From positions 186,001-250,000 of the IMG/VR virus record IMGVR_UViG_3300044213_000107: a DNA stretch of 64,000 bases; one strand, 5' to 3'. Below, in pieces: positions 168 through 36,014 of this stretch. The translations under genes were made by a program, and so were the position numbers. Positions within the stretch are counted from its first letter, which is position 1; each line of letters opens with the position of its first letter. The notes below the pieces were generated by a model that made no database searches, was not told where the DNA came from, and was given only the letters and a program-made list of their open reading frames with translations.

Positions 168-646
168 GAAAAGAATGTGCTCAACTGTTGTTAGAAGAAA
201 TGTCAGTAAATGATAAAATTCGTGTGATCACTGCTGATCTCGGGTTTGGCATTCTAGACCACATACGAAATGCTTACCCAGATCGTTTTTATAATGTGGG
301 TGCTGCAGAACAACTAATGATTGGTGTTGGCATAGGAATGGCCGAAGAAGGTCTTGTACCTGTTTGCTATTCAATGAGTAGTTTTTTATTGTATAGGCCT
401 TTTGAGTTTTTGCGTAACTATGTCAACTACGAGCACATACCAGTTAAGTTATTAGGGTCTGGTCGCGATCAAGATTATAGTCACGATGGTGTTAGTCACT
501 GGGCACACGACGACGAGCTAGTATTAAACGCATTACCAAATATTAAAATGTATAAGCCTAATAATTTAGATGAGTTAAACATTAATTTTAATGAATACAT
601 TAATAGTTCCAATCCTGCTTATTTAAATCTAAGGAGAGCAATTTGA
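164..646 (+). CDS. transketolase C-terminal (pyrimidine-binding) subunit
   Basis: TADLGFG, NVGAAEQLMIGVGIGMA and SHW motifs of split transketolases. Confidence 0.85.
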   Translation: MRKECAQLLLEEMSVNDKIRVITADLGFGILDHIRNAYPDRFYNVGAAEQLMIGVGIGMAEEGLVPVCYSMSSFLLYRPFEFLRNYVNYEHIPVKLLGSGRDQDYSHDGVSHWAHDDELVLNALPNIKMYKPNNLDELNINFNEYINSSNPAYLNLRRAI

Positions 647-1572
647 GTACTAAAGTAGTTTATGTAACAGGATGTCTTGGATTTATTGGATATCATGTAA
701 CTGTTGCTTGTTTAGAACGTGGTTGGTATGTTAGAGGCATTGACAATATAACTTATGCAAGTAATATTGATTTTTTGCCTAAATTACAAGCATACCCAAG
801 ATTTTATTTTGAGCAAACAGATATAAACAACATTGAAAAGTTATACGAGTGCGATTATATTATAAACACCGCCGCAGAAACTCACGTCGACAATAGTATT
901 GTTAGCAGTGATGTATTCTTGCGTAGCAATATTAATGGCGTACACCGACTATTAGAATTAATTAAAGCCAGTAAACAAAAACCTACTTTATTGCATTTTA
1001 GCACAGATGAAGTCTACGGAGACATTGTCGAAGGTGCACACACAGAAACAGATTTGCTAAAACCAAGTAATCCATACTCAGCAACCAAAGCTGCAGCTGA
1101 TATGTTGATTAGTGCCTGGGCCAGAACATTTGATGTACCATATGTTATGGTTCGGCCAACAAATAACTATGGTATAGGACAATACACAGAAAAGTTCATT
1201 CCTCATAGTATCAAATACTATATGCTAGGTCGAGCTATTCCTTTACACAATGCCGGTACTCCTAGACGAACATGGCTGCACGTAAGCGATACCGCTAGTG
1301 CAATTATTGCTATTATCGATGCCGGCGTAAAAAATGAAATTTATAACATCTCAGGAAACTACGAAACTGATAATTTAACTGTTGCTCAACGTATTGTTGA
1401 ACTAGCAGGCGGTGCAGGAGAATTTGATTTGAGCATTACTCGCCCTGGCCAAGATGTGCGTTACGCTGTTGATGACACCAAAATAAAAGCCCTAGGTTGG
1501 CAACCTAGAGCTGATTTTGACACTGAACTTGCATTAATTGTAGATTACTACAAAAACAAGTTTGTTTGGTAA
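643..1572 (+). CDS. rfbB: dTDP-glucose 4,6-dehydratase-like NAD-dependent epimerase/dehydratase
   Basis: VTGCLGFIG Rossmann motif, AAETHVDNSI, STDEVYG, YSATK, TNNYG, RPGQDVRYA. Confidence 0.88.
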   Translation: MSTKVVYVTGCLGFIGYHVTVACLERGWYVRGIDNITYASNIDFLPKLQAYPRFYFEQTDINNIEKLYECDYIINTAAETHVDNSIVSSDVFLRSNINGVHRLLELIKASKQKPTLLHFSTDEVYGDIVEGAHTETDLLKPSNPYSATKAAADMLISAWARTFDVPYVMVRPTNNYGIGQYTEKFIPHSIKYYMLGRAIPLHNAGTPRRTWLHVSDTASAIIAIIDAGVKNEIYNISGNYETDNLTVAQRIVELAGGAGEFDLSITRPGQDVRYAVDDTKIKALGWQPRADFDTELALIVDYYKNKFVW

Positions 1573-10971: not shown

Positions 10972-11409
10972 TTATAGTATAGCCGATAACCAATCAGTAT
11001 ACAATAAATTTTTATGTATTTTTATTTTCATTATCCCAGGAAAACTCATAAAGGAATGAGTCTTCCATACCTTGTTGCTTGTATCTTTGTACACAGATAT
11101 TTTAGATATGCTATTGATAAAATCTATAGTATCCACTGTTAACCTTTCCAACACAATATATAAATCTTCAGTTATATCATTGTTGGAATCAATTTTTGTG
11201 TCTGTTAGTTCCTTATTAACAAATTCTATTGAAACACTGGTTAAATCAGAATTAACAGGAATATTATAATGATGTATTTCTTCTATATCATTTTTATGTT
11301 CAATCGCATATTCGTACACACATAATTTATTGTTTATAAAAATGTTATATACAGGTTTTTTAGTAGACGTTGAATGGAGTAGCAACGATAGGGATAACTT
11401 TTTTGTCAT
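10972..11409 (-). CDS. hypothetical protein in the tRNA-inserted cassette
   Basis: 145-aa ORF overlapping the radical SAM C-terminus. Confidence 0.65.
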   Translation of the reverse strand: MTKKLSLSLLLHSTSTKKPVYNIFINNKLCVYEYAIEHKNDIEEIHHYNIPVNSDLTSVSIEFVNKELTDTKIDSNNDITEDLYIVLERLTVDTIDFINSISKISVYKDTSNKVWKTHSFMSFPGIMKIKIHKNLLYTDWLSAIL

Positions 11410-12892
11410 TTTGCTTGTGCTCTAAATATTTTTGCTCTAATCCTTCGATCTCTAATAATTTTTCATTTTGTCGGTTGATTTCAGAATAATACCCATATTC
11501 CTGCATTACTTCAACAAATCTTTTCCATCTGTTTACTCTAACATCAAATGTATTGTTTACAAATTGTGTGCTAGTCCAGAAAAAATCGCCCCACTGGTCA
11601 TGCCTATTATGTTCAAGACCGTATTCATCTGCATATCGTTGCATGAACCCGCTTCCATTTGTTAGCACCATTGGCAAAGATAAAAATACTTTTATCATAT
11701 TGTTAGTTGTTAAGTGGGCATGAGTTTTAAGTAAATCGATACTTTGTTGGAAATCATCTTCCGTTTCGGTGGGATATCCTACAAACATTAACCATACTTG
11801 TTTTATACCTTTATCAAAACAATTTTCAGCAAACCAAGTTATATCTTCATTACTGAATTTCTTCTTCATATCGTTACGAACTTTTTCACTACCCGACTCT
11901 ATGCCTACTTTAAACAATTTCGCTCCGGCAGTTGATGCTAGTTTAAAATCTGATTCAGGCATGGATATTTTAGATCGACAAATGGCATAGCCAGAATATT
12001 CTATTCTATTGGGAATTTCTTCAGTTAATACCGTATTCATTAAACGATAATTTGTGATACTCCCATTCACAAGATTGTCAGTAAACTCAAACTTATTAAT
12101 ACCATATTTAGAATGTGTTTCGATAATTTCACGTGCTATATCATTACCTTTTCTGTAGACGAATTTTGGCCAAGACGACTGCACATCGCAAAATGTACAC
12201 TCTCTGACACATCCTTTACTGCCAGTAACCGGTATAGTTAAATTTTTATTTTTGTAACTTGGATACAATGAAAAATTATATCCTTCCCATGAAGGTGCAG
12301 GTGTGTTACTAAGTGCCTCTGCAGATACAGGAGGTGCAGTGTGTATTCCTTTTTTCTTATTTTGGATGACAGAAATCAAATCATTTTCCGCATCCCCACG
12401 ATACACAGAATCTATCGGAAGATAATCCATGAAATAATTAGCATAATTAATTCCACTGATTCGTTCGTTGTTATCTAGACCTCTGCCACCTATCATTATG
12501 TAACTGTTAGGCGATATCTCTCGAACTATAGTGGATAAAGGTACAACAAAATCTAAACTTTGGCTAGAAAATACAGACAATAAAATTGTATCCGGATTAA
12601 AATTTTTTATTTGTTGTTTAACAGCTTTTCTAAGCCATTTTAAAATTTTTAAAATATTAATGCTATTTGCCGGTCTGTACCCTCTTATGGCAAACATATC
12701 TACTATTATATTCCATTGATCTGCAAATTCGCTAAACAAATCAATATTTAGGTCCCAAACTTTACTATTGTATCCATTATGTTTTAAAATGCCGTTTATA
12801 ACTGCAGGGCCGTATGGAACATCTCCGAAACTTTCTATTCCTGTATTAACAACTCTTACTGGAACTACTATTGTAAGGACATTTTTATTCAT
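11360..12892 (-). CDS. cobalamin-binding (class B-like) radical SAM protein
   Basis: N-terminal B12-binding-like domain (PYGPAVI...GG...GDAE), KGCVRECTFC, GIESGS, FVGYPTET. Confidence 0.85.
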   Translation of the reverse strand: MNKNVLTIVVPVRVVNTGIESFGDVPYGPAVINGILKHNGYNSKVWDLNIDLFSEFADQWNIIVDMFAIRGYRPANSINILKILKWLRKAVKQQIKNFNPDTILLSVFSSQSLDFVVPLSTIVREISPNSYIMIGGRGLDNNERISGINYANYFMDYLPIDSVYRGDAENDLISVIQNKKKGIHTAPPVSAEALSNTPAPSWEGYNFSLYPSYKNKNLTIPVTGSKGCVRECTFCDVQSSWPKFVYRKGNDIAREIIETHSKYGINKFEFTDNLVNGSITNYRLMNTVLTEEIPNRIEYSGYAICRSKISMPESDFKLASTAGAKLFKVGIESGSEKVRNDMKKKFSNEDITWFAENCFDKGIKQVWLMFVGYPTETEDDFQQSIDLLKTHAHLTTNNMIKVFLSLPMVLTNGSGFMQRYADEYGLEHNRHDQWGDFFWTSTQFVNNTFDVRVNRWKRFVEVMQEYGYYSEINRQNEKLLEIEGLEQKYLEHKQNDKKVIPIVATPFNVY

Positions 12893-13476: not shown

Positions 13477-13513
13477 GGTAGGAGCACGGGGATTTGAACC
13501 CTGAACCTATCAA
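13476..13513 (-). pseudogene. tRNA 3'-half remnant fused to the HNH stop codon
   Basis: TTGAT-AGGTT-CAGGG-TTCAAAT-CCCCG-TGCTCCT-A-CCA, with no matching 5' half found. Confidence 0.7.
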
Positions 13514-14085
13514 TGACTGAGTAGTCGTTTTGCCCTGGCGTGGCTAGCACCCTTGTCAGGCAACCCAACACTTCTCAATGCTTCTGAAATAGTATTATGT
13601 TTCTTAACAGCCTCTAATAATACTTCATCCGGAACAATTCTTTTTTTGTTATTTCTTCCTCGCCAAGTCTTAGTTTTTGAATGACAATTAGGACAAATAC
13701 ATTCTAAATTAGATCGGTCATTATTTTTTGTATCACCGTCTTTATGCTCTAATTCTAAAACAATAGGATCACCCATCCATTCTGAAATTCCACAATGGTT
13801 ACACTTATGACCTTGCTCTTCTAATACCCGTCGCTTTCTATTCTCGCTACCTAATTTTTCAAAAGGTGTGGATTGGTATTTCTCTAATGCCCAAGCTGTT
13901 GTCTTGGCACTTCGTAATCTTATTTCCTCGGTTGTAATTGGAGTTTTTCTAGTCCAACGACCGGCATTAGCAATACTTTTCTTCTTTTTGCTTTCTTCAG
14001 TAAACACTCTACTATTTGAACATTTTCTAGAACAGAATGTTCCAGGCTTAGTATGTGCTGTATTACATTTAGGACAATTTTTCAT
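13510..14085 (-). CDS. HNH homing endonuclease
   Basis: CPKC...FCSRKC zinc finger; CNHC...LELEHKDGDTKNNDRSNLECICPNCH. Confidence 0.92.
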   Translation of the reverse strand: MKNCPKCNTAHTKPGTFCSRKCSNSRVFTEESKKKKSIANAGRWTRKTPITTEEIRLRSAKTTAWALEKYQSTPFEKLGSENRKRRVLEEQGHKCNHCGISEWMGDPIVLELEHKDGDTKNNDRSNLECICPNCHSKTKTWRGRNNKKRIVPDEVLLEAVKKHNTISEALRSVGLPDKGASHARAKRLLSH

Positions 14086-14149: not shown

Positions 14150-14223
14150 TGGTAGGCCCGGAGGGTACTGACCCCTCTTTTACGGATTAAAAGTCCGTTA
14201 CTTCACCTTAAAGTTTCAAGCCC
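14150..14223 (-). tRNA. tRNA-Lys(TTT) with non-canonical T-loop
   Basis: ACGGA-CTTTTAA-TCCGT; T arm GAGGG-GTCAGTA-CCCTC. Confidence 0.8.
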
Positions 14224-16130: not shown

Positions 16131-16280
16131 TTATTCTTTAGTTTGTTCTTTGTGTTCTAGTAGTTTTTGTTGATATTGATCTTCAGTTAAACCATGCCAA
16201 CCACAACACTTACCGTCTGGGCTACGGCCACAACCGCATTTACCAATGTCTTCTGCATTTTCTTGTACTCTCATTTGCAT
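16131..16280 (-). CDS. 49-aa CDGSH-like iron-sulfur/zinc-finger miniprotein (not in the ORF track)
   Basis: MQMRVQENAEDIGKCGCGRSPDGKCCGWHGLTEDQYQQ...; CxCxxS...CxGxH; AAGGA SD. Confidence 0.7.
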   Translation of the reverse strand: MQMRVQENAEDIGKCGCGRSPDGKCCGWHGLTEDQYQQKLLEHKEQTKE

Positions 16281-16300
16281 GCATTTCCTTTATTAAAAAA

Positions 16301-16377
16301 TGGTCCGTGTGACACGATTCGAACATGCGACCACCTGGTCCCAAACCAGGAGCTCTACCAGGCTGAGCTACACACGG
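16301..16377 (-). tRNA. tRNA-Pro(TGG)
   Basis: CCTGG-TTTGGGA-CCAGG. Confidence 0.95.
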
Positions 16378-16382
16378 AAAAC

Positions 16383-16457
16383 TGGATGCGGGAGACGGAA
16401 TTGCACCGCCGATCTTCAGGTTATGAGCCTGATGAGTTACTACTTCTCCATCCCGCG
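16383..16457 (-). tRNA. tRNA-fMet(CAT)
   Basis: C1:A72 mismatch, TCAGG-CTCATAA-CCTGA, T-loop TGCAATT. Confidence 0.88.
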
Positions 16458-16465
16458 ATAAACAA

Positions 16466-16539
16466 TGGTAAGGGAACTAGGAATCGAACCTAGAATAGCA
16501 GAATCAAAATCTGTTGTGATACCATTTCACTATTCCCCA
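16466..16539 (-). tRNA. tRNA-Gln(TTG)
   Basis: Loop TTTTGAT, unpaired 1:72. Confidence 0.92.
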
Positions 16540-16545
16540 ACGATG

Positions 16546-16621
16546 TGGTACTCGGTAGGGAATTCGAATCCCTGTTCACGCCGTGAAAGGGCGTTGTCCT
16601 AGGCCTCTAGACGAACCGAGC
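16546..16621 (-). tRNA. tRNA-Glu(TTC)
   Basis: ACGCC-CTTTCAC-GGCGT. Confidence 0.95.
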
Positions 16622-16630
16622 ATACTTGTT

Positions 16631-16709
16631 TGGCGACTTGTAGGGGATTTGAACCCCTGATCTCTACCGTGACAGGGTAGCGCATTAAGCCAGACTATGC
16701 TAACAAGCC
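16631..16709 (-). tRNA. tRNA-Asp(GTC)
   Basis: CTACC-CTGTCAC-GGTAG, G73. Confidence 0.95.
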
Positions 16710-16714
16710 AAATT

Positions 16715-16952
16715 CTCTATATGTAAACATACCTAAGGAACTCTTGAACAATATGGACTCTGCCGGCACCACGGGTTCGTCTCCCGATTGGGTTCATTCG
16801 TTATTACAGCCTACATGATCTGTCAGTACACTCGTACAGTATCTTGCGATCCGTAACTACCTTCATGTGCACTGCATACTCCGCCCCGGCGAGCTGTCCC
16901 CTTTGCAAGCACCTAACAGTATAGGTAACCTTTTGTACGTTTACATATAGAG
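16715..16952 (-). ncRNA. candidate structured RNA (238 nt) heading the tRNA transcript
   Basis: 18-bp closing stem CTCTATATGTAAACGTAC/GTATGTTTACATATAGAG; inner GCCGG/CCGGC, GGAC/GTCC, ACATGA/TCATGT, CGGG/CCCG helices. Confidence 0.65.
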
Positions 16953-16985
16953 GCTATTGTTTACAATAGCTTATATGTGATTAAC

Positions 16986-17156
16986 TTTTTAAAGAACACA
17001 GTTAATTGCTTAACAAGCATGTATTGTAACACCTTTTTGGACAATTAGCAAGTGTTTTTTACTGCTGTTGCTGATTTGCTACAACGTTTGTTCGATAACA
17101 AACTAGTTAATTTCTTAACTTGTATCTATTATAGCACCAAATAATAACCCGCACAA
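16986..17156 (-). promoter_or_regulatory. tandem sigma70 promoters, each followed by a GNRA hairpin, then a boxA-like site
   Basis: P1 TTGTGC-N17-TATAAT (17156-17128), GTTAA-GAAA-TTAAC (17106-17119); P2 TTGCTA-N17-TACAAT (17051-17023), GTTAA-GCAA-TTAAC (17001-17014); GTTCTTTAAAAA (16986-16997). Confidence 0.7.
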
Positions 17157-17189
17157 TCTTCGGGTTTTGGGTGTTGTTTTTTAATAACA

Positions 17190-17212
17190 TGGAGTAGGTG
17201 ACAGGACTTGAA
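17190..17212 (-). pseudogene. 3' remnant (T-loop to CCA) of an ancestral tRNA, probably Cys
   Basis: TTCAAGT-CCTGT-CACCTAC-T-CCA, U73. Confidence 0.8.
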
Positions 17213-17247
17213 ATATATATTATTTCGTTTTGAACATAAATAATAAC

Positions 17248-18033
17248 ATGAACACCTGTCAACAATGTACTTCATTATTTGCTCAAACTCCTGGAACGTA
17301 CGGTAAATTTTGCTCTGTATCCTGTAGTAGTAAGTTTAATAATAAAATTAGACGCCAACAGACTACGGAAAACTATTTATTAAATCCAAAAGTTTGTAAA
17401 AATTGCAATTCAATCATAAATTATTCTCAAAGAAAAAGTAATATTTTTTGTAGCCGATCCTGCGCCGCTGTGTTTAATAATGCCAAAAAAGATTGGACTA
17501 ATATTAAAACTGGGCCGACACCTAAACAAAAGGCACCGAAATTAAAAAGAAAAGCGAGAACTAATACTATCCCAGATGCAGACGGACCATACACTATTAT
17601 ATACCTATGCACTTGCAAATTTACTGGAAAAAAATGGTACTCCCCAACAGTTAAGACCATACACCCATCAACAATATCAACTAAAAAATTGTATTCTTAT
17701 CAATGTAGATTTAACTTTGGTATTAAGTCGTACCCTGAATGGTTTGCTTATGCATCAAATTTAATAAACACTAACGGCTGGTACTCAGCCTCTAATAGAG
17801 GTAATAATTTATCTGGATGTTCTCGTGATCATTTGTATTCAGTATCGGATGGATACAAAAACAATATAGATCCTAAAATAATATCTCATCCTGCAAACTG
17901 TGAGATAATTCCGCACAGGAAAAATCAGAGTAAAAACAAGACTTCGTCGATTACATTAGAAGAACTAAAAGAAAGAATCAAAAAATTTAATCAAAAATAT
18001 TTGGAGATGCCAGATGGGGTCGAGCCATCCTAG
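17248..18033 (+). CDS. HNH-family endonuclease with two Cys-rich zinc-finger repeats
   Basis: CQQC...FCSVSC and CKNC...FCSRSC; SRDHLYSV...HPANCEIIPHRKNQSK; start taken at ATG 17248 (TAAATA-N5-ATG) rather than TTG 17230. Confidence 0.8.
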   Translation: MNTCQQCTSLFAQTPGTYGKFCSVSCSSKFNNKIRRQQTTENYLLNPKVCKNCNSIINYSQRKSNIFCSRSCAAVFNNAKKDWTNIKTGPTPKQKAPKLKRKARTNTIPDADGPYTIIYLCTCKFTGKKWYSPTVKTIHPSTISTKKLYSYQCRFNFGIKSYPEWFAYASNLINTNGWYSASNRGNNLSGCSRDHLYSVSDGYKNNIDPKIISHPANCEIIPHRKNQSKNKTSSITLEELKERIKKFNQKYLEMPDGVEPS

Positions 18034-18075
18034 AAAGTTTTGCAGGCTTCCACCTAACCGCTCGGACATGGCATC
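18002..18075 (-). tRNA. tRNA-Cys(GCA) with non-canonical T-loop
   Basis: GATGCCA/TGGCATC, U73, loop CTGCAAA, T arm GATGG-CTCGACC-CCATC; overlaps the HNH C-terminus antisense. Confidence 0.85.
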
Positions 18076-18220: not shown

Positions 18221-19402
18221 TTATACTGGGAATACTTCCCTAAAATTTGTTTTTCTTATACGATCTAACATACCAATATATTCGTTAAATGTATTGATTA
18301 AGTTAGGATTGTGCACAGCATTTTCCAATGAGTTTATTGTAAATTTAATCGCTGATATATAGTTATATCGCAGATAATGCGTTAAAGGAATCTGAGATTT
18401 TAGTTCTTGCAAATCGAGAATAAATTGATTTCTTTGTGCATCTGTTAACACTTCTATGTCTAAATATGGTTTAGACATTAATCTACCAACATTCACAGCA
18501 TATGAGTTATCAACACAATATTGAATTAATGGTATCAACGCCCAGAAACTTGTATACTGTAGTGTATGGCCAATGGTAATAGGATTATTAGGCCATGTAG
18601 GATTAGGACGTGTGGCTAATTTTTTAATATTAGCATCTACGGTTGCCCACTCACTACCATATCTAACATATTCTGTATGTTGCTCGGTACCTTCTAAACT
18701 TACAACTATTGCAACAGATTTAAATTTTGAAATACAATCGTATACTTCATCTGTTAATGTTGTACCGTTTGTGGTAACTGTTAAATTTAATTGCTCCGGA
18801 TGCGGAATGCTTTTTAACATTGCAATAGCATTAGGAGTTATAAGTGGCTCGCCACCTGTTAAAAAAATATGTTCAACATTTTCTAATAGTCGAGGCTCCA
18901 GCTCTTGATATTCATCTGTTTCAAACCAATTTCTTTTTTGTATAAATTGATCATCATGAGTTAAGTGAACAAAATTTTTATATTGTTCTCTATTCATTTT
19001 TACTTCAGTTTCTATACTAGAACTGCAATAAGGATTACACATTATACATTTTAAATTACAGTGATTGCCAAATTCAACATGTAAATGTTTTATGCCATAA
19101 GATTTATCTGGTGAAAAATCTTGTCTAATAAAATTTTCAAATGTGCGATTACCATTTATTCTGTACGACGATGATCCATTGTCTTCTTCGTCCCAACAAC
19201 GACTACAACCTTCATGTCTTTGGCCATTGTCTAGTTCTTGACTAATTTTAATAACTTTTGTTTGTCGCCAACGATCAAATTGATCATATTTATCAACCAA
19301 ATTACCATCTTTTATTTGATAATTACAACAAGGTGTAAGTGTGCCGTCTGTGCGAATATTAACACCAATATGCGAATGTATACAAAATGTTTCTTGATTC
19401 AT
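18221..19402 (-). CDS. radical SAM protein with SPASM/twitch-type cluster
   Basis: CNLKCIMC, TGGEP, LTPCC...CSRC; start likely ATG 19402 (TATAAATA-N5-ATG); track gives 19423. Confidence 0.9.
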   Translation of the reverse strand: MNQETFCIHSHIGVNIRTDGTLTPCCNYQIKDGNLVDKYDQFDRWRQTKVIKISQELDNGQRHEGCSRCWDEEDNGSSSYRINGNRTFENFIRQDFSPDKSYGIKHLHVEFGNHCNLKCIMCNPYCSSSIETEVKMNREQYKNFVHLTHDDQFIQKRNWFETDEYQELEPRLLENVEHIFLTGGEPLITPNAIAMLKSIPHPEQLNLTVTTNGTTLTDEVYDCISKFKSVAIVVSLEGTEQHTEYVRYGSEWATVDANIKKLATRPNPTWPNNPITIGHTLQYTSFWALIPLIQYCVDNSYAVNVGRLMSKPYLDIEVLTDAQRNQFILDLQELKSQIPLTHYLRYNYISAIKFTINSLENAVHNPNLINTFNEYIGMLDRIRKTNFREVFPV

Positions 19403-19432
19403 AGTGATATTTATATGCAACATATATTGTAA

Positions 19433-34841: not shown

Positions 34842-36014
34842 TCAAGTATTTATCAGTAGTTGGTAGAACTCAGGGTGTGTGTCTGCATATGAAGTGTCTG
34901 TTGCGGCATCATATTTTTTAACATAAGATAAAAAATCAGCAGAACTAAAATTTTCATCTACAATAATGTAATCTGCCAAAAAATCCAGTTCTTTAATACC
35001 GGCAGTTTTATCTAATATGGCAGTTCTAAGACTAGAACTCACTTCTTGTGCCGAGCACTTTCCGAGTCCGGTGTTAAAAGGTGTAAAGTTTTTATAGACA
35101 GCAGGGAATTCTGTAGATAAAAAATTACACAATTCTGAAATGTAAAATATATTATACAGGCTGTAGGTTATGTTAAAACATAATTCTACTCTAGGTCCAC
35201 AATTGGCTTGGAACCATTTAATATTTTCTACTACTTGATCCCATTTTGCGCCACGGCGTTGATATTCAAATCTTTTGCCGATGTCATCTATACTAAAAAA
35301 TAATCTAACTTTTTCAACAGAATTTAATATTTCTAAAAATTCCGGAGTCGGCAAGGTTGTGGCATTTGTAAATATCCAAATAGTTAGATCATCGTAGCTG
35401 CGATATTTTCCCATGTTTCGAAAAAATTCATAGTATGCCGGTTCCATAAATATTTCGCCGCCTTGCAGTTGTACCAATTTAAGACTTTTAAATAATGCAG
35501 GATCATCAATTACAGGACGGTCATTCTTTTTATATTTCATTCCAGGCCAAATAAATCCCCAGTGTTTTTCGTACAAAGGAATCCAACTACTGCTGTTAAA
35601 AGGACCACATATAGCACAACTTAGATTACAAAGGTTTCCTAGATTTAAATCAATCCTTGTTAAAACTTCTACTTCACTAGTGCCGTGCTCTCTAATAGCA
35701 TGATATCTTCCACTGGCGTGAGGATTTATTTGATCTTGCTGATAACAATGGCCGCAACCAGGATGCTTTTCGTTATTTTTATTTTTTTCTCGTAGCTCAA
35801 CAATAAATGGTGCAGAATTATAATCATTGTAAATTTCATTGCTGCGAGAAATAAACATATCCTCACCTTTAGGCTTATAATCCCTATTAAAATAACAACA
35901 GGGTTTATAATCAAAGCGATCGTTCAGTTGATTTATGTATGCTCTATTCCATATCTCAGGGCAATAGACATCAGGATCTACATCGGTGTGATGTATCTTT
36001 ATTGGATATTCCAT
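34842..36014 (-). CDS. radical SAM protein with SPASM/twitch-type cluster
   Basis: CNLSCAIC, QGGE, KPCC...CGHC. Confidence 0.88.
   Translation of the reverse strand: MEYPIKIHHTDVDPDVYCPEIWNRAYINQLNDRFDYKPCCYFNRDYKPKGEDMFISRSNEIYNDYNSAPFIVELREKNKNNEKHPGCGHCYQQDQINPHASGRYHAIREHGTSEVEVLTRIDLNLGNLCNLSCAICGPFNSSSWIPLYEKHWGFIWPGMKYKKNDRPVIDDPALFKSLKLVQLQGGEIFMEPAYYEFFRNMGKYRSYDDLTIWIFTNATTLPTPEFLEILNSVEKVRLFFSIDDIGKRFEYQRRGAKWDQVVENIKWFQANCGPRVELCFNITYSLYNIFYISELCNFLSTEFPAVYKNFTPFNTGLGKCSAQEVSSSLRTAILDKTAGIKELDFLADYIIVDENFSSADFLSYVKKYDAATDTSYADTHPEFYQLLINT

What the first reader, a model, noticed from the sequence alone, without database searches (positions are those of the whole stretch)
16715..16952. 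238-nt highly structured RNA as the first product of the tRNA operon
Seen: an 18-bp closing stem with nested helices (GGAC/GUCC, GCCGG/CCGGC, ACAUGA/UCAUGU, AUC-GCAA-GAU, GUAC/GUAC, CGGG/CCCG). It is GC-rich, has no convincing ORF, lies right after boxA and ends 5 nt before tRNA-Asp, so RNase P cleavage would release it. It lacks RNase P, tmRNA and SRP signatures by eye and is much shorter than GOLLD or ROOL. Inferred: an unclassified stable phage RNA.
Basis: partly seen in the sequence, partly recalled or inferred. Interest (0 to 1): 0.65.

Follow-up and report, generated by a model that had tools for sequence, protein, structure and literature searches.

The report
New structured RNA heading phage tRNA operons
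The 238-nt element is a real, evolutionarily conserved, intricately folded RNA gene that matches no Rfam family, sits behind a ribosomal-operon-style leader at the start of the tRNA operon in many uncultured jumbo phages, and has no known job.

Summary
The element (window 16715-16952, minus strand) is real. It has about 65 distinct homologues in IMG/VR jumbo-phage contigs and more in metagenomes. All lie in the same context: sigma-70-like promoter, boxB-like hairpin, a near-invariant boxA-like 18-mer, a small leader hairpin, the RNA, then a same-strand tRNA array starting with Asp/Glu.

Covariation is strong. The core is 93.6% paired against 71% in shuffles and 30-49% in slid controls. 21 of 27 pairs carry double changes, and the 12 highest mutual-information column pairs are all annotated pairs. 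The closing stem covaries as well.

The conserved fold differs from the single-sequence fold. A 22-24 bp closing stem P1 leads to a long bulged helix P2, which ends in a three-way junction with invariant UAGG / A-N-GAA strands (P3, P4). Invariant GUAAU then leads to a variable 3' domain.

No Rfam 15 family matches the window or 11 checked homologues, although GOLLD and tmRNA were found next to homologues by the same scans. The model found nothing in five cultured relatives or in 75 chance pattern matches from prokaryote genomes. Transcription is not shown.

Best reading: a new family of processed stable RNA. Antitermination by Nus factors, excision by RNase III and RNase P, and action in trans are inferred, not shown.

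The parts
17023..17051 (-). Sigma-70-like promoter: TTGCTA, 17-nt spacer, TG-extended TACAAT
   Evidence: Consensus scan. Homologous loci have TTGACA / TATAAT-like hexamers at the same distance from boxA. Function inferred.
17001..17014 (-). boxB-like hairpin: 5-bp stem with GNRA tetraloop (GUUAA-GCAA-UUAAC)
   Evidence: Read from sequence. An equivalent hairpin (for example GUUGA-GAAA-UCAAC) sits just 5' of boxA in most of the 61 boxA loci.
16981..16998 (-). boxA-like 18-mer, TGTTCTTTAAAAAGTTAA
   Evidence: The exact 18-mer is present in 61 IMG/VR stretches, most of them downstream of promoter-like hexamers and upstream of tRNA arrays, GOLLD or this RNA. It occurs once in the window's own genome. 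A boxA-like motif lies 19-36 nt upstream of nearly all family members. Binding by Nus factors is inferred.
16943..16978 (-). Leader hairpin (boxC-like) that pairs with the first 7 nt of the P1 5' arm, using a copy of the sequence at the RNA's 3' end
   Evidence: An equivalent hairpin sequesters 6-10 nt of the P1 5' arm in 50 of 50 distinct upstream contexts.
16715..16952 (-). The 238-nt structured RNA (whole element)
   Evidence: About 65 distinct homologues of 191-317 nt with closing stems. Fold z-score -3.97. Single copy in its own genome.
16929..16952 (-). P1 5' arm (RNA 1-24)
   Evidence: On a MAFFT alignment not fitted to any structure, P1 is 92.4% paired, 10 of 19 pairs carry compensatory changes, and slid controls pair at 24-59%.
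16715..16738 (-). P1 3' arm (RNA 215-238)
   Evidence: Same as the 5' arm.
16802..16930 (-). Conserved core domain (GGUUAC ... GUAAUA), containing P2, P3 and P4
   Evidence: Covariance model R1 scores 80.7 bits, E 7e-17. Covariation statistics.
16916..16928 (-). P2 5' strand (RNA 25-37): UUA, CCUAUA, CUGU
   Evidence: P2a and P2b covary strongly; for example column pair 10/249 is CG 30, AU 19, GC 10, and pair 15/233 is UA 27, GC 17, UG 13, CG 4. The UUA/UAA base of P2 is invariant, so that pairing is hypothetical.
16804..16823 (-). P2 3' strand (RNA 130-149): ACAG, 4-nt bulge AUCA, UGUAGG, bulge CUG, UAA
   Evidence: The natural variant U32C turns a U-G pair into C-G in P2a.
16867..16912 (-). 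P3 arm (RNA 41-86): outer helix GUGC/GCAC plus UGCA/UGCA, with a distal hairpin
   Evidence: Seven of the eight outer P3 pairs carry double changes. The distal part varies between subgroups; one subgroup has a K-turn-like motif there, seen by inspection only.
16862..16866 (-). Junction strand A-U-G-A-A (family consensus A-N-GAA)
   Evidence: G and AA are invariant in 61 sequences.
16825..16861 (-). P4 arm (RNA 92-128): base GGUA/UACU, asymmetric internal loop, hairpin capped by GCAA
   Evidence: All four inner P4 pairs carry double changes. Natural variants A95G (A-U to G-U) and U115C (G-U to G-C) keep pairing. A GNRA cap is frequent in homologues (inspection).
16739..16802 (-). Variable 3' domain (RNA 151-214): P6, the P7 hairpin CGGG-AGACGAA-CCCG, and an unpaired stretch holding the palindrome UGCCGGCA
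   Evidence: P7 covaries in the 14-sequence alignment. P6 was seen by inspection only. The domain is reduced to a short hairpin in L193 and to a simple hairpin in the L158 group.
16631..16709 (-). tRNA-Asp, the first tRNA of the array, 5 nt downstream of the element
   Evidence: ARAGORN and Rfam. In homologues the first downstream genes are tRNA-Asp or tRNA-Glu (less often Ser, Leu or Tyr) on the same strand.

Best explanation
The element is the gene for a previously unclassified, conserved, multi-junction structured RNA. It is the first gene in the long untranslated tRNA operon of a lineage of uncultured, mostly freshwater, jumbo phages.

Shown: the RNA fold is under selection on the tRNA strand, and the gene always sits in the same cassette.

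Inferred mechanism:
1. A sigma-70-type promoter starts transcription about 64 nt upstream.
2. The boxB-like hairpin and boxA-like 18-mer recruit the host Nus-factor antitermination complex, as in ribosomal RNA operons. This lets RNA polymerase read through more than 7 kb of untranslated, highly structured RNA without Rho termination.
3. The leader hairpin transiently holds the 5' arm of P1 until the 3' arm is made 220 nt later. The 22-24 bp P1 duplex then forms by strand displacement, like the leader-trailer helix of 16S rRNA.
4. P1 is cut by RNase III and the tRNA-Asp 5' end by RNase P, releasing a discrete RNA of roughly 200-235 nt.
5. This RNA acts in trans through its invariant junction nucleotides, as a binding scaffold for a protein or RNA partner in the phage's takeover of tRNA or translation. 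In this it would be analogous to, but not homologous with, GOLLD and ROOL.

Rough odds:
- Genuine structured RNA family: about 0.95.
- Transcribed with the tRNAs from the boxA promoter: about 0.85.
- Excised through P1 by a double-strand-specific RNase: about 0.6.
- Trans-acting rather than purely cis-acting: about 0.65.
- Specific partner: unknown.
For: - Homologues: 13 were found by anchoring on the boxA 18-mer. A further pattern scan gave 110 stretches and 82 distinct elements.
- The core model R1 hits about 90 places in 156 viral loci and 33 of 80 metagenome loci.
- Covariation: 93.6% of cells paired against 71.4% shuffled and 30-49% slid; 348 cells with double changes against 108; covariation score 0.533 against 0.17.
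- P1 was tested on an alignment not fitted to structure. In an all-against-all mutual-information scan the top 12 column pairs were exactly the annotated pairs. RNAalifold re-derives P2, P3 and P4.
- Many G-U pairs fix the strand.
- Five natural variants in a freshwater run are all neutral or pair-preserving in the comparative fold.
- Context is constant: boxA-like motif 19-36 nt upstream and a same-strand tRNA array downstream in essentially all members; leader hairpin in 50 of 50; promoter-like site.
- Evidence that it is a gene rather than a leader: a tandem duplication with two complete copies (L230), and extra structured modules inserted between the RNA and the first tRNA in about half the members.
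- In relatives, GOLLD occupies the slot behind the same promoter-boxA leader, separated from boxA by a small tRNA-like module enclosed in its own closing stem.
Against: - There is no transcript evidence. Three metatranscriptomes show zero depth on the element, though they cover only tRNA genes of other organisms.
- No member is in a cultured phage, so nothing has been tested.
- RNase III cleavage, Nus-factor binding and trans action all rest on analogy.
- P1 is conserved in sequence as well as in pairing (CUAUAU invariant). That could mean recognition by some other factor, or simply the three-way constraint imposed by the leader hairpin.
- The window's own minimum-energy fold is 18 kcal/mol more stable than the comparative fold, so its periphery may fold differently.
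- At least one complete relative (G001) lacks the RNA, so it is not essential to the lineage.
Confidence: 0.6

Rival explanations
1. It is a purely cis-acting processing and folding cassette: a spacer that loads the antitermination complex, gives RNase III an entry site and helps the downstream tRNAs mature, after which it is degraded. It would have no function of its own.
For: - It is always first in the operon, right behind boxA.
- The long closing stem and the leader hairpin that competes for it resemble rRNA leader-trailer elements.
- Other small modules with long AU-rich closing stems sit in the same operons.
- A complete relative does without it.
Against: - A spacer would need only P1. 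Instead an internal core of about 130 nt has invariant junction nucleotides and 21 of 27 covarying pairs across phages whose tail sheaths are only about 50% identical.
- Most boxA loci go straight into tRNAs with no such element, so the tRNAs do not need it.
- A tandem duplication exists (L230).
Confidence: 0.2
2. It is a riboswitch-like or T-box-like sensor in the 5' leader that controls transcription of the tRNA operon.
For: - It lies in a 5' leader position.
- It has a conserved multi-junction core with invariant unpaired nucleotides.
- It has mutually exclusive pairings: leader hairpin against outer P1.
- The middle base of A-N-GAA varies (U, C, A or G).
Against: - There is no terminator, antiterminator or other expression platform (0 terminator-like sites).
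- The first tRNA starts 1-11 nt after P1 in half of the members.
- No Rfam riboswitch or T-box hit.
- The tandem copy and the intervening modules do not fit a leader switch.
Confidence: 0.05
3. It is a highly reduced or diverged member of a known RNA family (GOLLD/ROOL domain, SRP, RNase P, 6S, tmRNA piece) that covariance models miss.
For: - It shares the tRNA-island context with GOLLD and ROOL.
- It has short look-alike strings: CGG-AGCA resembles SRP helix 8, and GUAAU resembles the SRP Alu U-turn. Both comparisons are from memory only.
Against: - cmscan at E<=10 on the window and at E<=1 on 14 homologue loci gives nothing over any member. The same scans find GOLLD at 192-201 bits and tmRNA in the same loci.
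- R1 does not hit the loci whose boxA is followed by GOLLD.
- The AGCA-like tract is a pure 4-nt bulge flanked by covarying pairs, not an SRP-type internal loop.
Confidence: 0.04
4. It is a DNA-level element: a miniature inverted-repeat mobile element, recombination site or replication signal whose terminal inverted repeats merely look like an RNA stem.
For: - It has 18-24 bp terminal inverted repeats with conserved sequence.
- A third copy of the terminal 7-9 nt lies nearby.
- Homing endonuclease genes lie nearby in the window.
Against: - There is one copy per genome.
- The locus and orientation relative to the tRNAs are always the same.
- Compensatory changes pass through G-U intermediates, which pair on one strand only.
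- The interior helices covary. GC content is elevated, as in the tRNAs.
Confidence: 0.02

Closest known systems
GOLLD RNA (Rfam RF02032) and ROOL RNA
   Same: - They are orphan, elaborately structured RNAs of phages and prophages, typically beside tRNA islands (10.1101/2024.12.08.627333).
- In relatives of this phage GOLLD lies behind the identical promoter-boxA leader, after a small tRNA-like module, and it co-occurs with this RNA in one operon (L098).
- Function is unknown in all three cases.
   Different: - There is no detectable homology.
- This RNA is 190-320 nt, against about 580 nt (ROOL) and more than 800 nt (GOLLD).
- The architecture differs: a closing stem, a bulged P2 and three-way junctions.
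- Multimerisation has not been tested.
Ribosomal RNA operon leader system (boxB-boxA-boxC antitermination plus the leader-trailer helix cut by RNase III)
   Same: - The order promoter, hairpin, boxA and a further hairpin is the same.
- The boxA-like core UGUUCUUUAAAAA matches 11 of 13 positions of the E. coli rrn boxA UGCUCUUUAACAA (consensus from my own knowledge).
- A long duplex formed by sequences flanking a structured RNA, followed by tRNAs, parallels the leader-trailer helix (PMC10250234 for the rrn system).
   Different: - The enclosed RNA is about 200 nt and unrelated to 16S rRNA.
- It is encoded by a phage.
- Neither Nus-factor binding nor RNase III cleavage has been tested.
Stable small RNAs of the phage T4 tRNA gene cluster (species 1 and 2, rnaC/rnaD; from my own knowledge)
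   Same: They are non-tRNA stable RNAs of unknown function, co-transcribed with phage tRNAs and matured by host RNases.
   Different: - The T4 RNAs are about 120-140 nt and lie at the distal end of the cluster.
- No sequence comparison could be run here.
- No boxA leader is known for them.
Processive antitermination RNAs (lambda nut, HK022 put)
   Same: They are promoter-proximal RNA elements of phages that modify RNA polymerase. The boxB/boxA part of this locus probably works like nut or rrn sites.
   Different: - The 238-nt RNA lies downstream of, and is separable from, boxA. Most boxA loci lack it.
- put RNAs are two simple stem-loops of about 70 nt.

Membership tests
GOLLD (RF02032) | Match to the Rfam covariance model at or above 150 bits | tested here: not met
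   No match even at E<=10 on window 16500-17300 or in the window's own genome. Positive controls: 191.7 bits in L086 and 201.2 bits in L098.
GOLLD / ROOL | Size of about 580 to more than 800 nt with the family-specific multi-pseudoknot architecture | tested here: not met
   Family members are 191-317 nt, and the consensus fold is different.
GOLLD / ROOL | Phage-encoded and adjacent to tRNA islands | tested here: met
   All members lie in viral or metagenomic contigs directly upstream of tRNA arrays. This is a shared context, not membership.
RNase P RNA, tmRNA, SRP RNA, 6S RNA | Match to the respective Rfam covariance models (and to ARAGORN for tmRNA) | tested here: not met
   Nothing over the element at E<=10, and nothing over 11 homologues at E<=1. 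tmRNA was detected elsewhere in the same loci, which shows the scans work.
T-box / riboswitch leaders | Aptamer followed by an expression platform (terminator/antiterminator or sequestered ribosome-binding site), and a match to an Rfam model | tested here: not met
   0 terminator-like sites in 16300-17400. The tRNA starts 5 nt after the element. No Rfam hit.
rrn-type antitermination leader (boxB-boxA-boxC) | boxA consensus a short distance downstream of a promoter, preceded by a hairpin, heading an untranslated RNA operon | tested here: met
   Promoter-like site at 17051-17023, hairpin at 17014-17001 and boxA-like 18-mer at 16998-16981. The same arrangement occurs in most of the 61 loci holding the 18-mer.
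rrn-type antitermination leader (boxB-boxA-boxC) | Binding of NusB/NusE and Nus-dependent read-through | not testable with these tools
   Needs biochemistry or genetics. The host is unknown.
RNase III processing stalk | Roughly two turns (about 20 bp or more) of near-perfect duplex formed by the sequences flanking the mature RNA | tested here: met
   P1 is 18+4 bp in the window and 17-24 bp in homologues, and it covaries.
RNase III processing stalk | Staggered cleavage within the duplex in vivo | not testable with these tools
   No reads cover the element in the RNA runs.
Miniature inverted-repeat mobile element | Multiple dispersed copies per genome, with target-site duplications | tested here: not met
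   There is a single copy in the 260.7-kb record, and the locus is constant across genomes.
T4 tRNA-cluster stable RNAs (rnaC/rnaD) | Sequence or structure similarity to the T4 species 1 and 2 RNAs | not tested
   No model or sequence was at hand. blastn of the region against 50,697 phage records, at E<=1e-5 only, found only tRNA-Asp matches.

The most novel reading that the evidence does not exclude
The RNA is a new functional RNA machine of jumbo phages, not just a scaffold. One version is an RNA that binds tRNAs or a tRNA-acting enzyme through its invariant three-way-junction core, for instance as a decoy or chaperone that protects the phage's own Asp/Glu/Tyr tRNAs from host anticodon nucleases. 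Another is an RNA that self-assembles into a higher-order particle, as GOLLD and ROOL do. In either case the boxB-boxA-leader-P1 cassette would be a phage copy of the ribosomal RNA biogenesis pathway, repurposed to make it.
Probability: 0.2. Interest if true: 0.85.

Novelty: categorically new. Interest (0 to 1): 0.7.

Why it matters
Large conserved RNAs with several junctions and invariant unpaired nucleotides are rare. In the past they have turned out to be ribozymes, riboswitches, parts of ribonucleoprotein machines or, as with GOLLD and ROOL, self-assembling cages.

This family gives a compact example (core about 130 nt, whole RNA about 190-320 nt), rich in covariation, from the least-explored phages: uncultured freshwater and marine jumbo phages. 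Its size is practical for chemical probing, crystallography or cryo-EM.

The finding also shows that these phages put a ribosomal-operon-type leader in front of their untranslated RNA operons. That leader comprises a near-invariant boxA 18-mer, a boxB-like hairpin and a leader hairpin that competes for the processing stem. It is a testable case of a phage borrowing the host's rRNA transcription and folding machinery.

The boxA 18-mer is also a practical anchor for finding further phage non-coding RNA genes.

Tried and rejected
1. blastn of the region against 50,697 phage records (E<=1e-5) found only tRNA-Asp matches.
2. An exact 21-mer from the P4 hairpin found nothing in IMG/VR.
3. Relatives of the neighbouring radical-SAM protein were only 25% identical and not useful.
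4. blastn of the element against five long tail-sheath relatives found no homologue, but did reveal the shared boxA 18-mer. Two other short matches there were chance hits in coding DNA.
5. The single-sequence minimum-energy fold was rejected as the family structure.
6. The UACC/GGUA hairpin that RNAalifold proposed on the first alignment was rejected. Its C-to-U change is compensated in the long-range P2a partner instead.
7. The idea that the GACGG hairpin loops pair with the CCGU strand of P2b was rejected, because the loops do not change when P2b changes (inspection).
8. SRP-like, hammerhead-like and 5S-like resemblances recalled from memory were not supported by Rfam scans or by the pairing pattern.
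9. Five cultured jumbo relatives gave no R1 hit. This is weak evidence, since stricter filters were used.
10. Metatranscriptome contigs gave no coverage of the element. That says nothing about expression, because the phage is not evidently present in those runs.
11. Two 2-mismatch boxA look-alikes in the window's own genome lie in coding DNA with no RNA family nearby.
12. The supplements of the IMG/VR structured-RNA catalogue (PMC10690425) are not held. I could not check whether a fragment of this RNA is among its 8,495 candidates of 29-151 nt.
13. A full-length covariance model was not built, for fear of the calibration limit. P6 and the 3' domain therefore rest on inspection and.

Full report
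**Where it is.** The window is part of a 260.7-kb IMG/VR virus record estimated at 74% complete. Its tail sheath is 35-46% identical to those of PA5oct-like, Atu_ph07-like and other jumbo phages. All 25-27 tRNA genes lie on the minus strand between 9743 and 18218. The element is therefore read on the minus strand: 16952 is its 5' end and 16715 its 3' end, 5 nt before tRNA-Asp (16709-16631).

**Observation check.**
- The 18-bp closing stem is exact. Its one G-U pair would be a C-A mismatch on the other strand.
- The minus strand folds to -81.3 kcal/mol (z = -3.97; 0 of 200 shuffles as good). The plus strand reaches -66.7.
- GC is 0.45-0.51 inside, like the tRNAs, against 0.30-0.34 upstream.
- There is no credible ORF.
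- Rfam 15 gives nothing at gathering score. At E<=10 the only non-tRNA match is an IMES-3 hit at 21.9 bits against a cut-off of 55.
- The element is single-copy in the window and in the whole record.

**How homologues were found.** Direct similarity searches failed.

In that relative the 18-mer lies behind a TTGACA/TAACAAT promoter-like pair and a small hairpin. It is followed by a leader hairpin and a small tRNA-like module in its own closing stem, and then by a GOLLD RNA at 191.7 bits.

Scanning IMG/VR for the 18-mer gave 61 stretches.
- Most show promoter-like hexamers, a 5-bp GNRA hairpin and the 18-mer, then run directly into tRNAs.
- A few run into GOLLD.
- Thirteen run into clear homologues of the 238-nt element.

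A pattern built from the P1 5' arm plus the invariant GGUUAY and UAGG motifs then found 110 viral stretches and 82 distinct elements. About 65 of these have closing stems of 17-24 bp and lengths of 191-317 nt, and many lie in records of 260-525 kb.

The same pattern gave 75 matches in one genome per 185,579 prokaryote species. None is a family member by the covariance model (0 hits at E<=1 in 546 kb). This serves both as a negative control and as evidence that the RNA has so far been seen only in viruses.

In metagenome contigs 33 of the first 80 pattern matches are members, including one marine contig. DNA nearly identical to the window occurs in at least ten freshwater metagenome runs from different studies.

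**The conserved structure.** By inspection of unaligned homologues and then by alignment, the family fold runs 5' to 3' as follows.
- P1: closing stem of 22-24 bp.
- Invariant GG/CC, then an invariant UUA that may pair with the UAA of the invariant GUAAU.
- P2a: for example CCUACA/UGUAGG, CCAAC/GUUGG, CUAAG/CUUAG, CCGAA/UUCGG or UCAGA/UCUGA.
- A 4-nt bulge, A-N-C-A, on the 3' strand.
- P2b: CCGU/ACGG, CCAG/CUGG, CCAC/GUGG, CUGU/ACAG or CCGG/CCGG.
- A three-way junction with invariant UAGG, an A-N-GAA strand and a single G.
- P3: the first arm, variable distally. One subgroup has a K-turn-like motif there, and the distal loop is often GNCG or UGACGG.
- P4: the second arm, with a short base, an asymmetric purine-rich internal loop and a hairpin usually capped by GNRA.
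- After GUAAUG(A), a variable 3' domain: P6 enclosing P7, whose loop is (A)GACGG(U), plus an optional P8. This domain is almost absent in L193 and is a simple hairpin in the L158 group.

**Covariation evidence.**
- A covariance model of the core (R1: 128 positions, 27 pairs) scores the window at 80.7 bits. It finds about 90 places in 156 viral loci, including one not found by any pattern (L111).
- On the resulting 61-sequence alignment, 93.6% of cells are paired, against 71.4% in column shuffles and 30-49% when partners are slid by 1-3 columns.
- 21 of 27 pairs carry double changes. The covariation score is 0.533, against 0.17 shuffled and 0.03-0.07 slid.
- Because that alignment is fitted to the model, I added three checks.
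  - An all-against-all mutual-information scan, in which the 12 best column pairs are exactly the annotated pairs.
  - RNAalifold, which re-derives P2a, P2b, P3 and P4.
  - P1 counted on a plain MAFFT alignment: 92.4% paired, 10 of 19 pairs compensatory, slid controls 24-59%.
- P7 covaries in the first 14-sequence alignment. P6 rests on inspection only.

**The window's own copy.** It fits every conserved helix. That fold is 18 kcal/mol less stable than the unconstrained minimum (-63.3 against -81.3 kcal/mol).

A variant contig from another freshwater run differs at five positions inside the element.
- U32C makes a U-G pair into C-G in P2a.
- A95G and U115C switch between Watson-Crick and wobble pairs in P4.
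- G81A and U82A fall in an internal loop of P3 in the comparative fold, but would break a helix (79-86 with 122-129) found only in the minimum-energy fold.

This favours the comparative fold in the window's own lineage.

**Context and the cassette.**
- In essentially every member a boxA-like motif, (N)GUUC(U/G/A)UUAAAA, lies 19-36 nt upstream.
- A same-strand tRNA array starting with Asp or Glu (sometimes Ser, Leu or Tyr first) lies downstream. It follows after 1-11 nt in about half of the members, and after 75-160 nt or more in the rest, where a further structured module with its own long closing stem is inserted.
- One contig carries two complete tandem copies (L230).
- In 50 of 50 distinct upstream contexts, the short hairpin after boxA pairs with the first 6-10 nt of the P1 5' arm. 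It does so using a copy of the 7-9 nt that end the RNA. The outer part of P1 therefore has two mutually exclusive partners.
- In the window the promoter-like site is TTGCTA-17-TACAAT with a TG extension (17051-17023).
- The boxA 18-mer is unique in the record, and no terminator-like site follows.

**Interpretation.**

Shown:
- This is a conserved RNA-level structure, on the tRNA strand, in a fixed expression cassette.
- It has been seen only in viral and metagenomic contigs and matches no Rfam family.

Inferred from established knowledge of rRNA operons (for example PMC10250234):
- The hairpin-boxA arrangement recruits Nus factors, so that polymerase can traverse a long untranslated operon.
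- The leader hairpin acts as a transient holder of the P1 5' arm.
- P1 is an RNase III stalk.
- RNase P trims at the tRNA.

I favour a trans-acting role for the released RNA for four reasons.
- The internal core is far more constrained than a spacer needs to be.
- Most boxA-tRNA operons lack the element.
- It can be duplicated in tandem.
- It need not touch the tRNA.

What it binds is unknown. The shared context with GOLLD and ROOL, which form RNA-only cages and lie beside phage tRNA islands (10.1101/2024.12.08.627333), makes a role in tRNA or translation takeover the most natural guess. That is a guess.

**Novelty.**
- No Rfam 15 family overlaps the window's element or 11 checked homologues, while GOLLD and tmRNA are detected in the same loci.
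- Five literature searches found no description of it.
- A 2023 catalogue of 8,495 short candidate structured RNAs (29-151 nt) from IMG/VR may contain a fragment of it, but could not be checked.
- No member was found in five cultured relatives.
- One complete relative, which carries GOLLD behind the same leader, lacks this RNA.

I therefore rate it a new RNA family. The caveat is that orphan structured RNAs next to phage tRNAs are a known phenomenon.

**Limits.**
- There is no expression data. The RNA runs laid on the region cover only tRNA genes of other organisms.
- Host, processing sites, partners and any multimerisation are all untested.
- The 3' domain was not modelled.
- E-values from R1 are rough, because its calibration was shortened.

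Noticed in passing
window 16981-17051 (minus); loci L093-L153: An rrn-like leader (promoter, 5-bp GNRA hairpin, exact 18-mer TGTTCTTTAAAAAGTTAA) is shared by 61 IMG/VR stretches. It heads tRNA arrays, GOLLD or this RNA. The 18-mer is a useful anchor for finding phage non-coding RNA operons.
   Followed up: yes
L086:477-938 (minus); L098:2526-2991 (plus); also L127, L153, L141: GOLLD RNAs (191.7 and 201.2 bits) occur in relatives, behind the same boxA leader or in the same operon as a homologue of the 238-nt RNA, with a tRNA embedded. None was found in the window's own 74%-complete record.
   Followed up: partly
L086 about 1385-1500 (minus) = L101/L141; L153 after boxA: Between boxA and GOLLD lies a module of about 105 nt, enclosed by its own AU-rich closing stem and preceded by a leader hairpin built in the same three-copy way. 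It has an acceptor-like stem and a T-arm-like GGUUCAAUUCC hairpin, but ARAGORN does not call it. It may be a tRNA-like RNA.
   Followed up: no
L102:5743-5875, L137, L098, L148 (after the RNA); L104, L130, L144 (a different module); L093, L099, L107 between tRNA-Asp and tRNA-Glu: At least three further unclassified structured modules (about 75-130 nt) sit inside these tRNA operons, each closed by a long stem. No Rfam hit was seen over those that were scanned.
   Followed up: no
L091:319-596, L099:3150-3572, L198:2870-3334: Circularly permuted (two-piece) tmRNA genes occur in related jumbo-phage contigs (102-129 bits), in two cases just upstream of the RNA-tRNA operon.
   Followed up: no
L230:78-298 and 304-529 (minus): Two complete, diverged copies of the RNA lie in tandem behind one boxA, 5 nt apart, followed by tRNA-Asp.
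   Followed up: partly
window 17230-18033 (+), 13510-14085 (-): HNH-type endonuclease-like ORFs are interspersed in the tRNA region. The first has an HNH-like motif seen by eye but no Pfam hit; it lies divergently, right upstream of the promoter, and its 3' end overlaps a weak tRNA-like Rfam hit at 18005-18075. The second has a weak, sub-threshold HNH_3 Pfam hit. Both are probably homing endonucleases.
   Followed up: no
window 18221-19423, 11360-12892, 34842-36014 (all minus): Three radical-SAM proteins lie in or next to the tRNA array. One has a weak, sub-threshold B12-binding domain hit and one a weak, sub-threshold SPASM-like hit. They may be RNA- or tRNA-modifying enzymes.
   Followed up: no
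window 16131-16280 (minus): A 49-aa Cys-rich ORF (containing CGCG...CCGWHG) sits between tRNA-Ala and tRNA-Pro inside the array. It has no Pfam hit.
   Followed up: no
window 14153-14223 and 18005-18075 (minus): Two tRNA-like Rfam hits (44.0 and 37.6 bits) are not called by ARAGORN. They may be divergent or degenerate tRNAs.
   Followed up: no
window 16762-16769 (RNA 184-191): A perfect palindrome, UGCCGGCA, lies in the otherwise unpaired part of the window's 3' domain. It could support a self-dimer or pair with the GC-rich P3 tip. It is not conserved in homologues.
   Followed up: no
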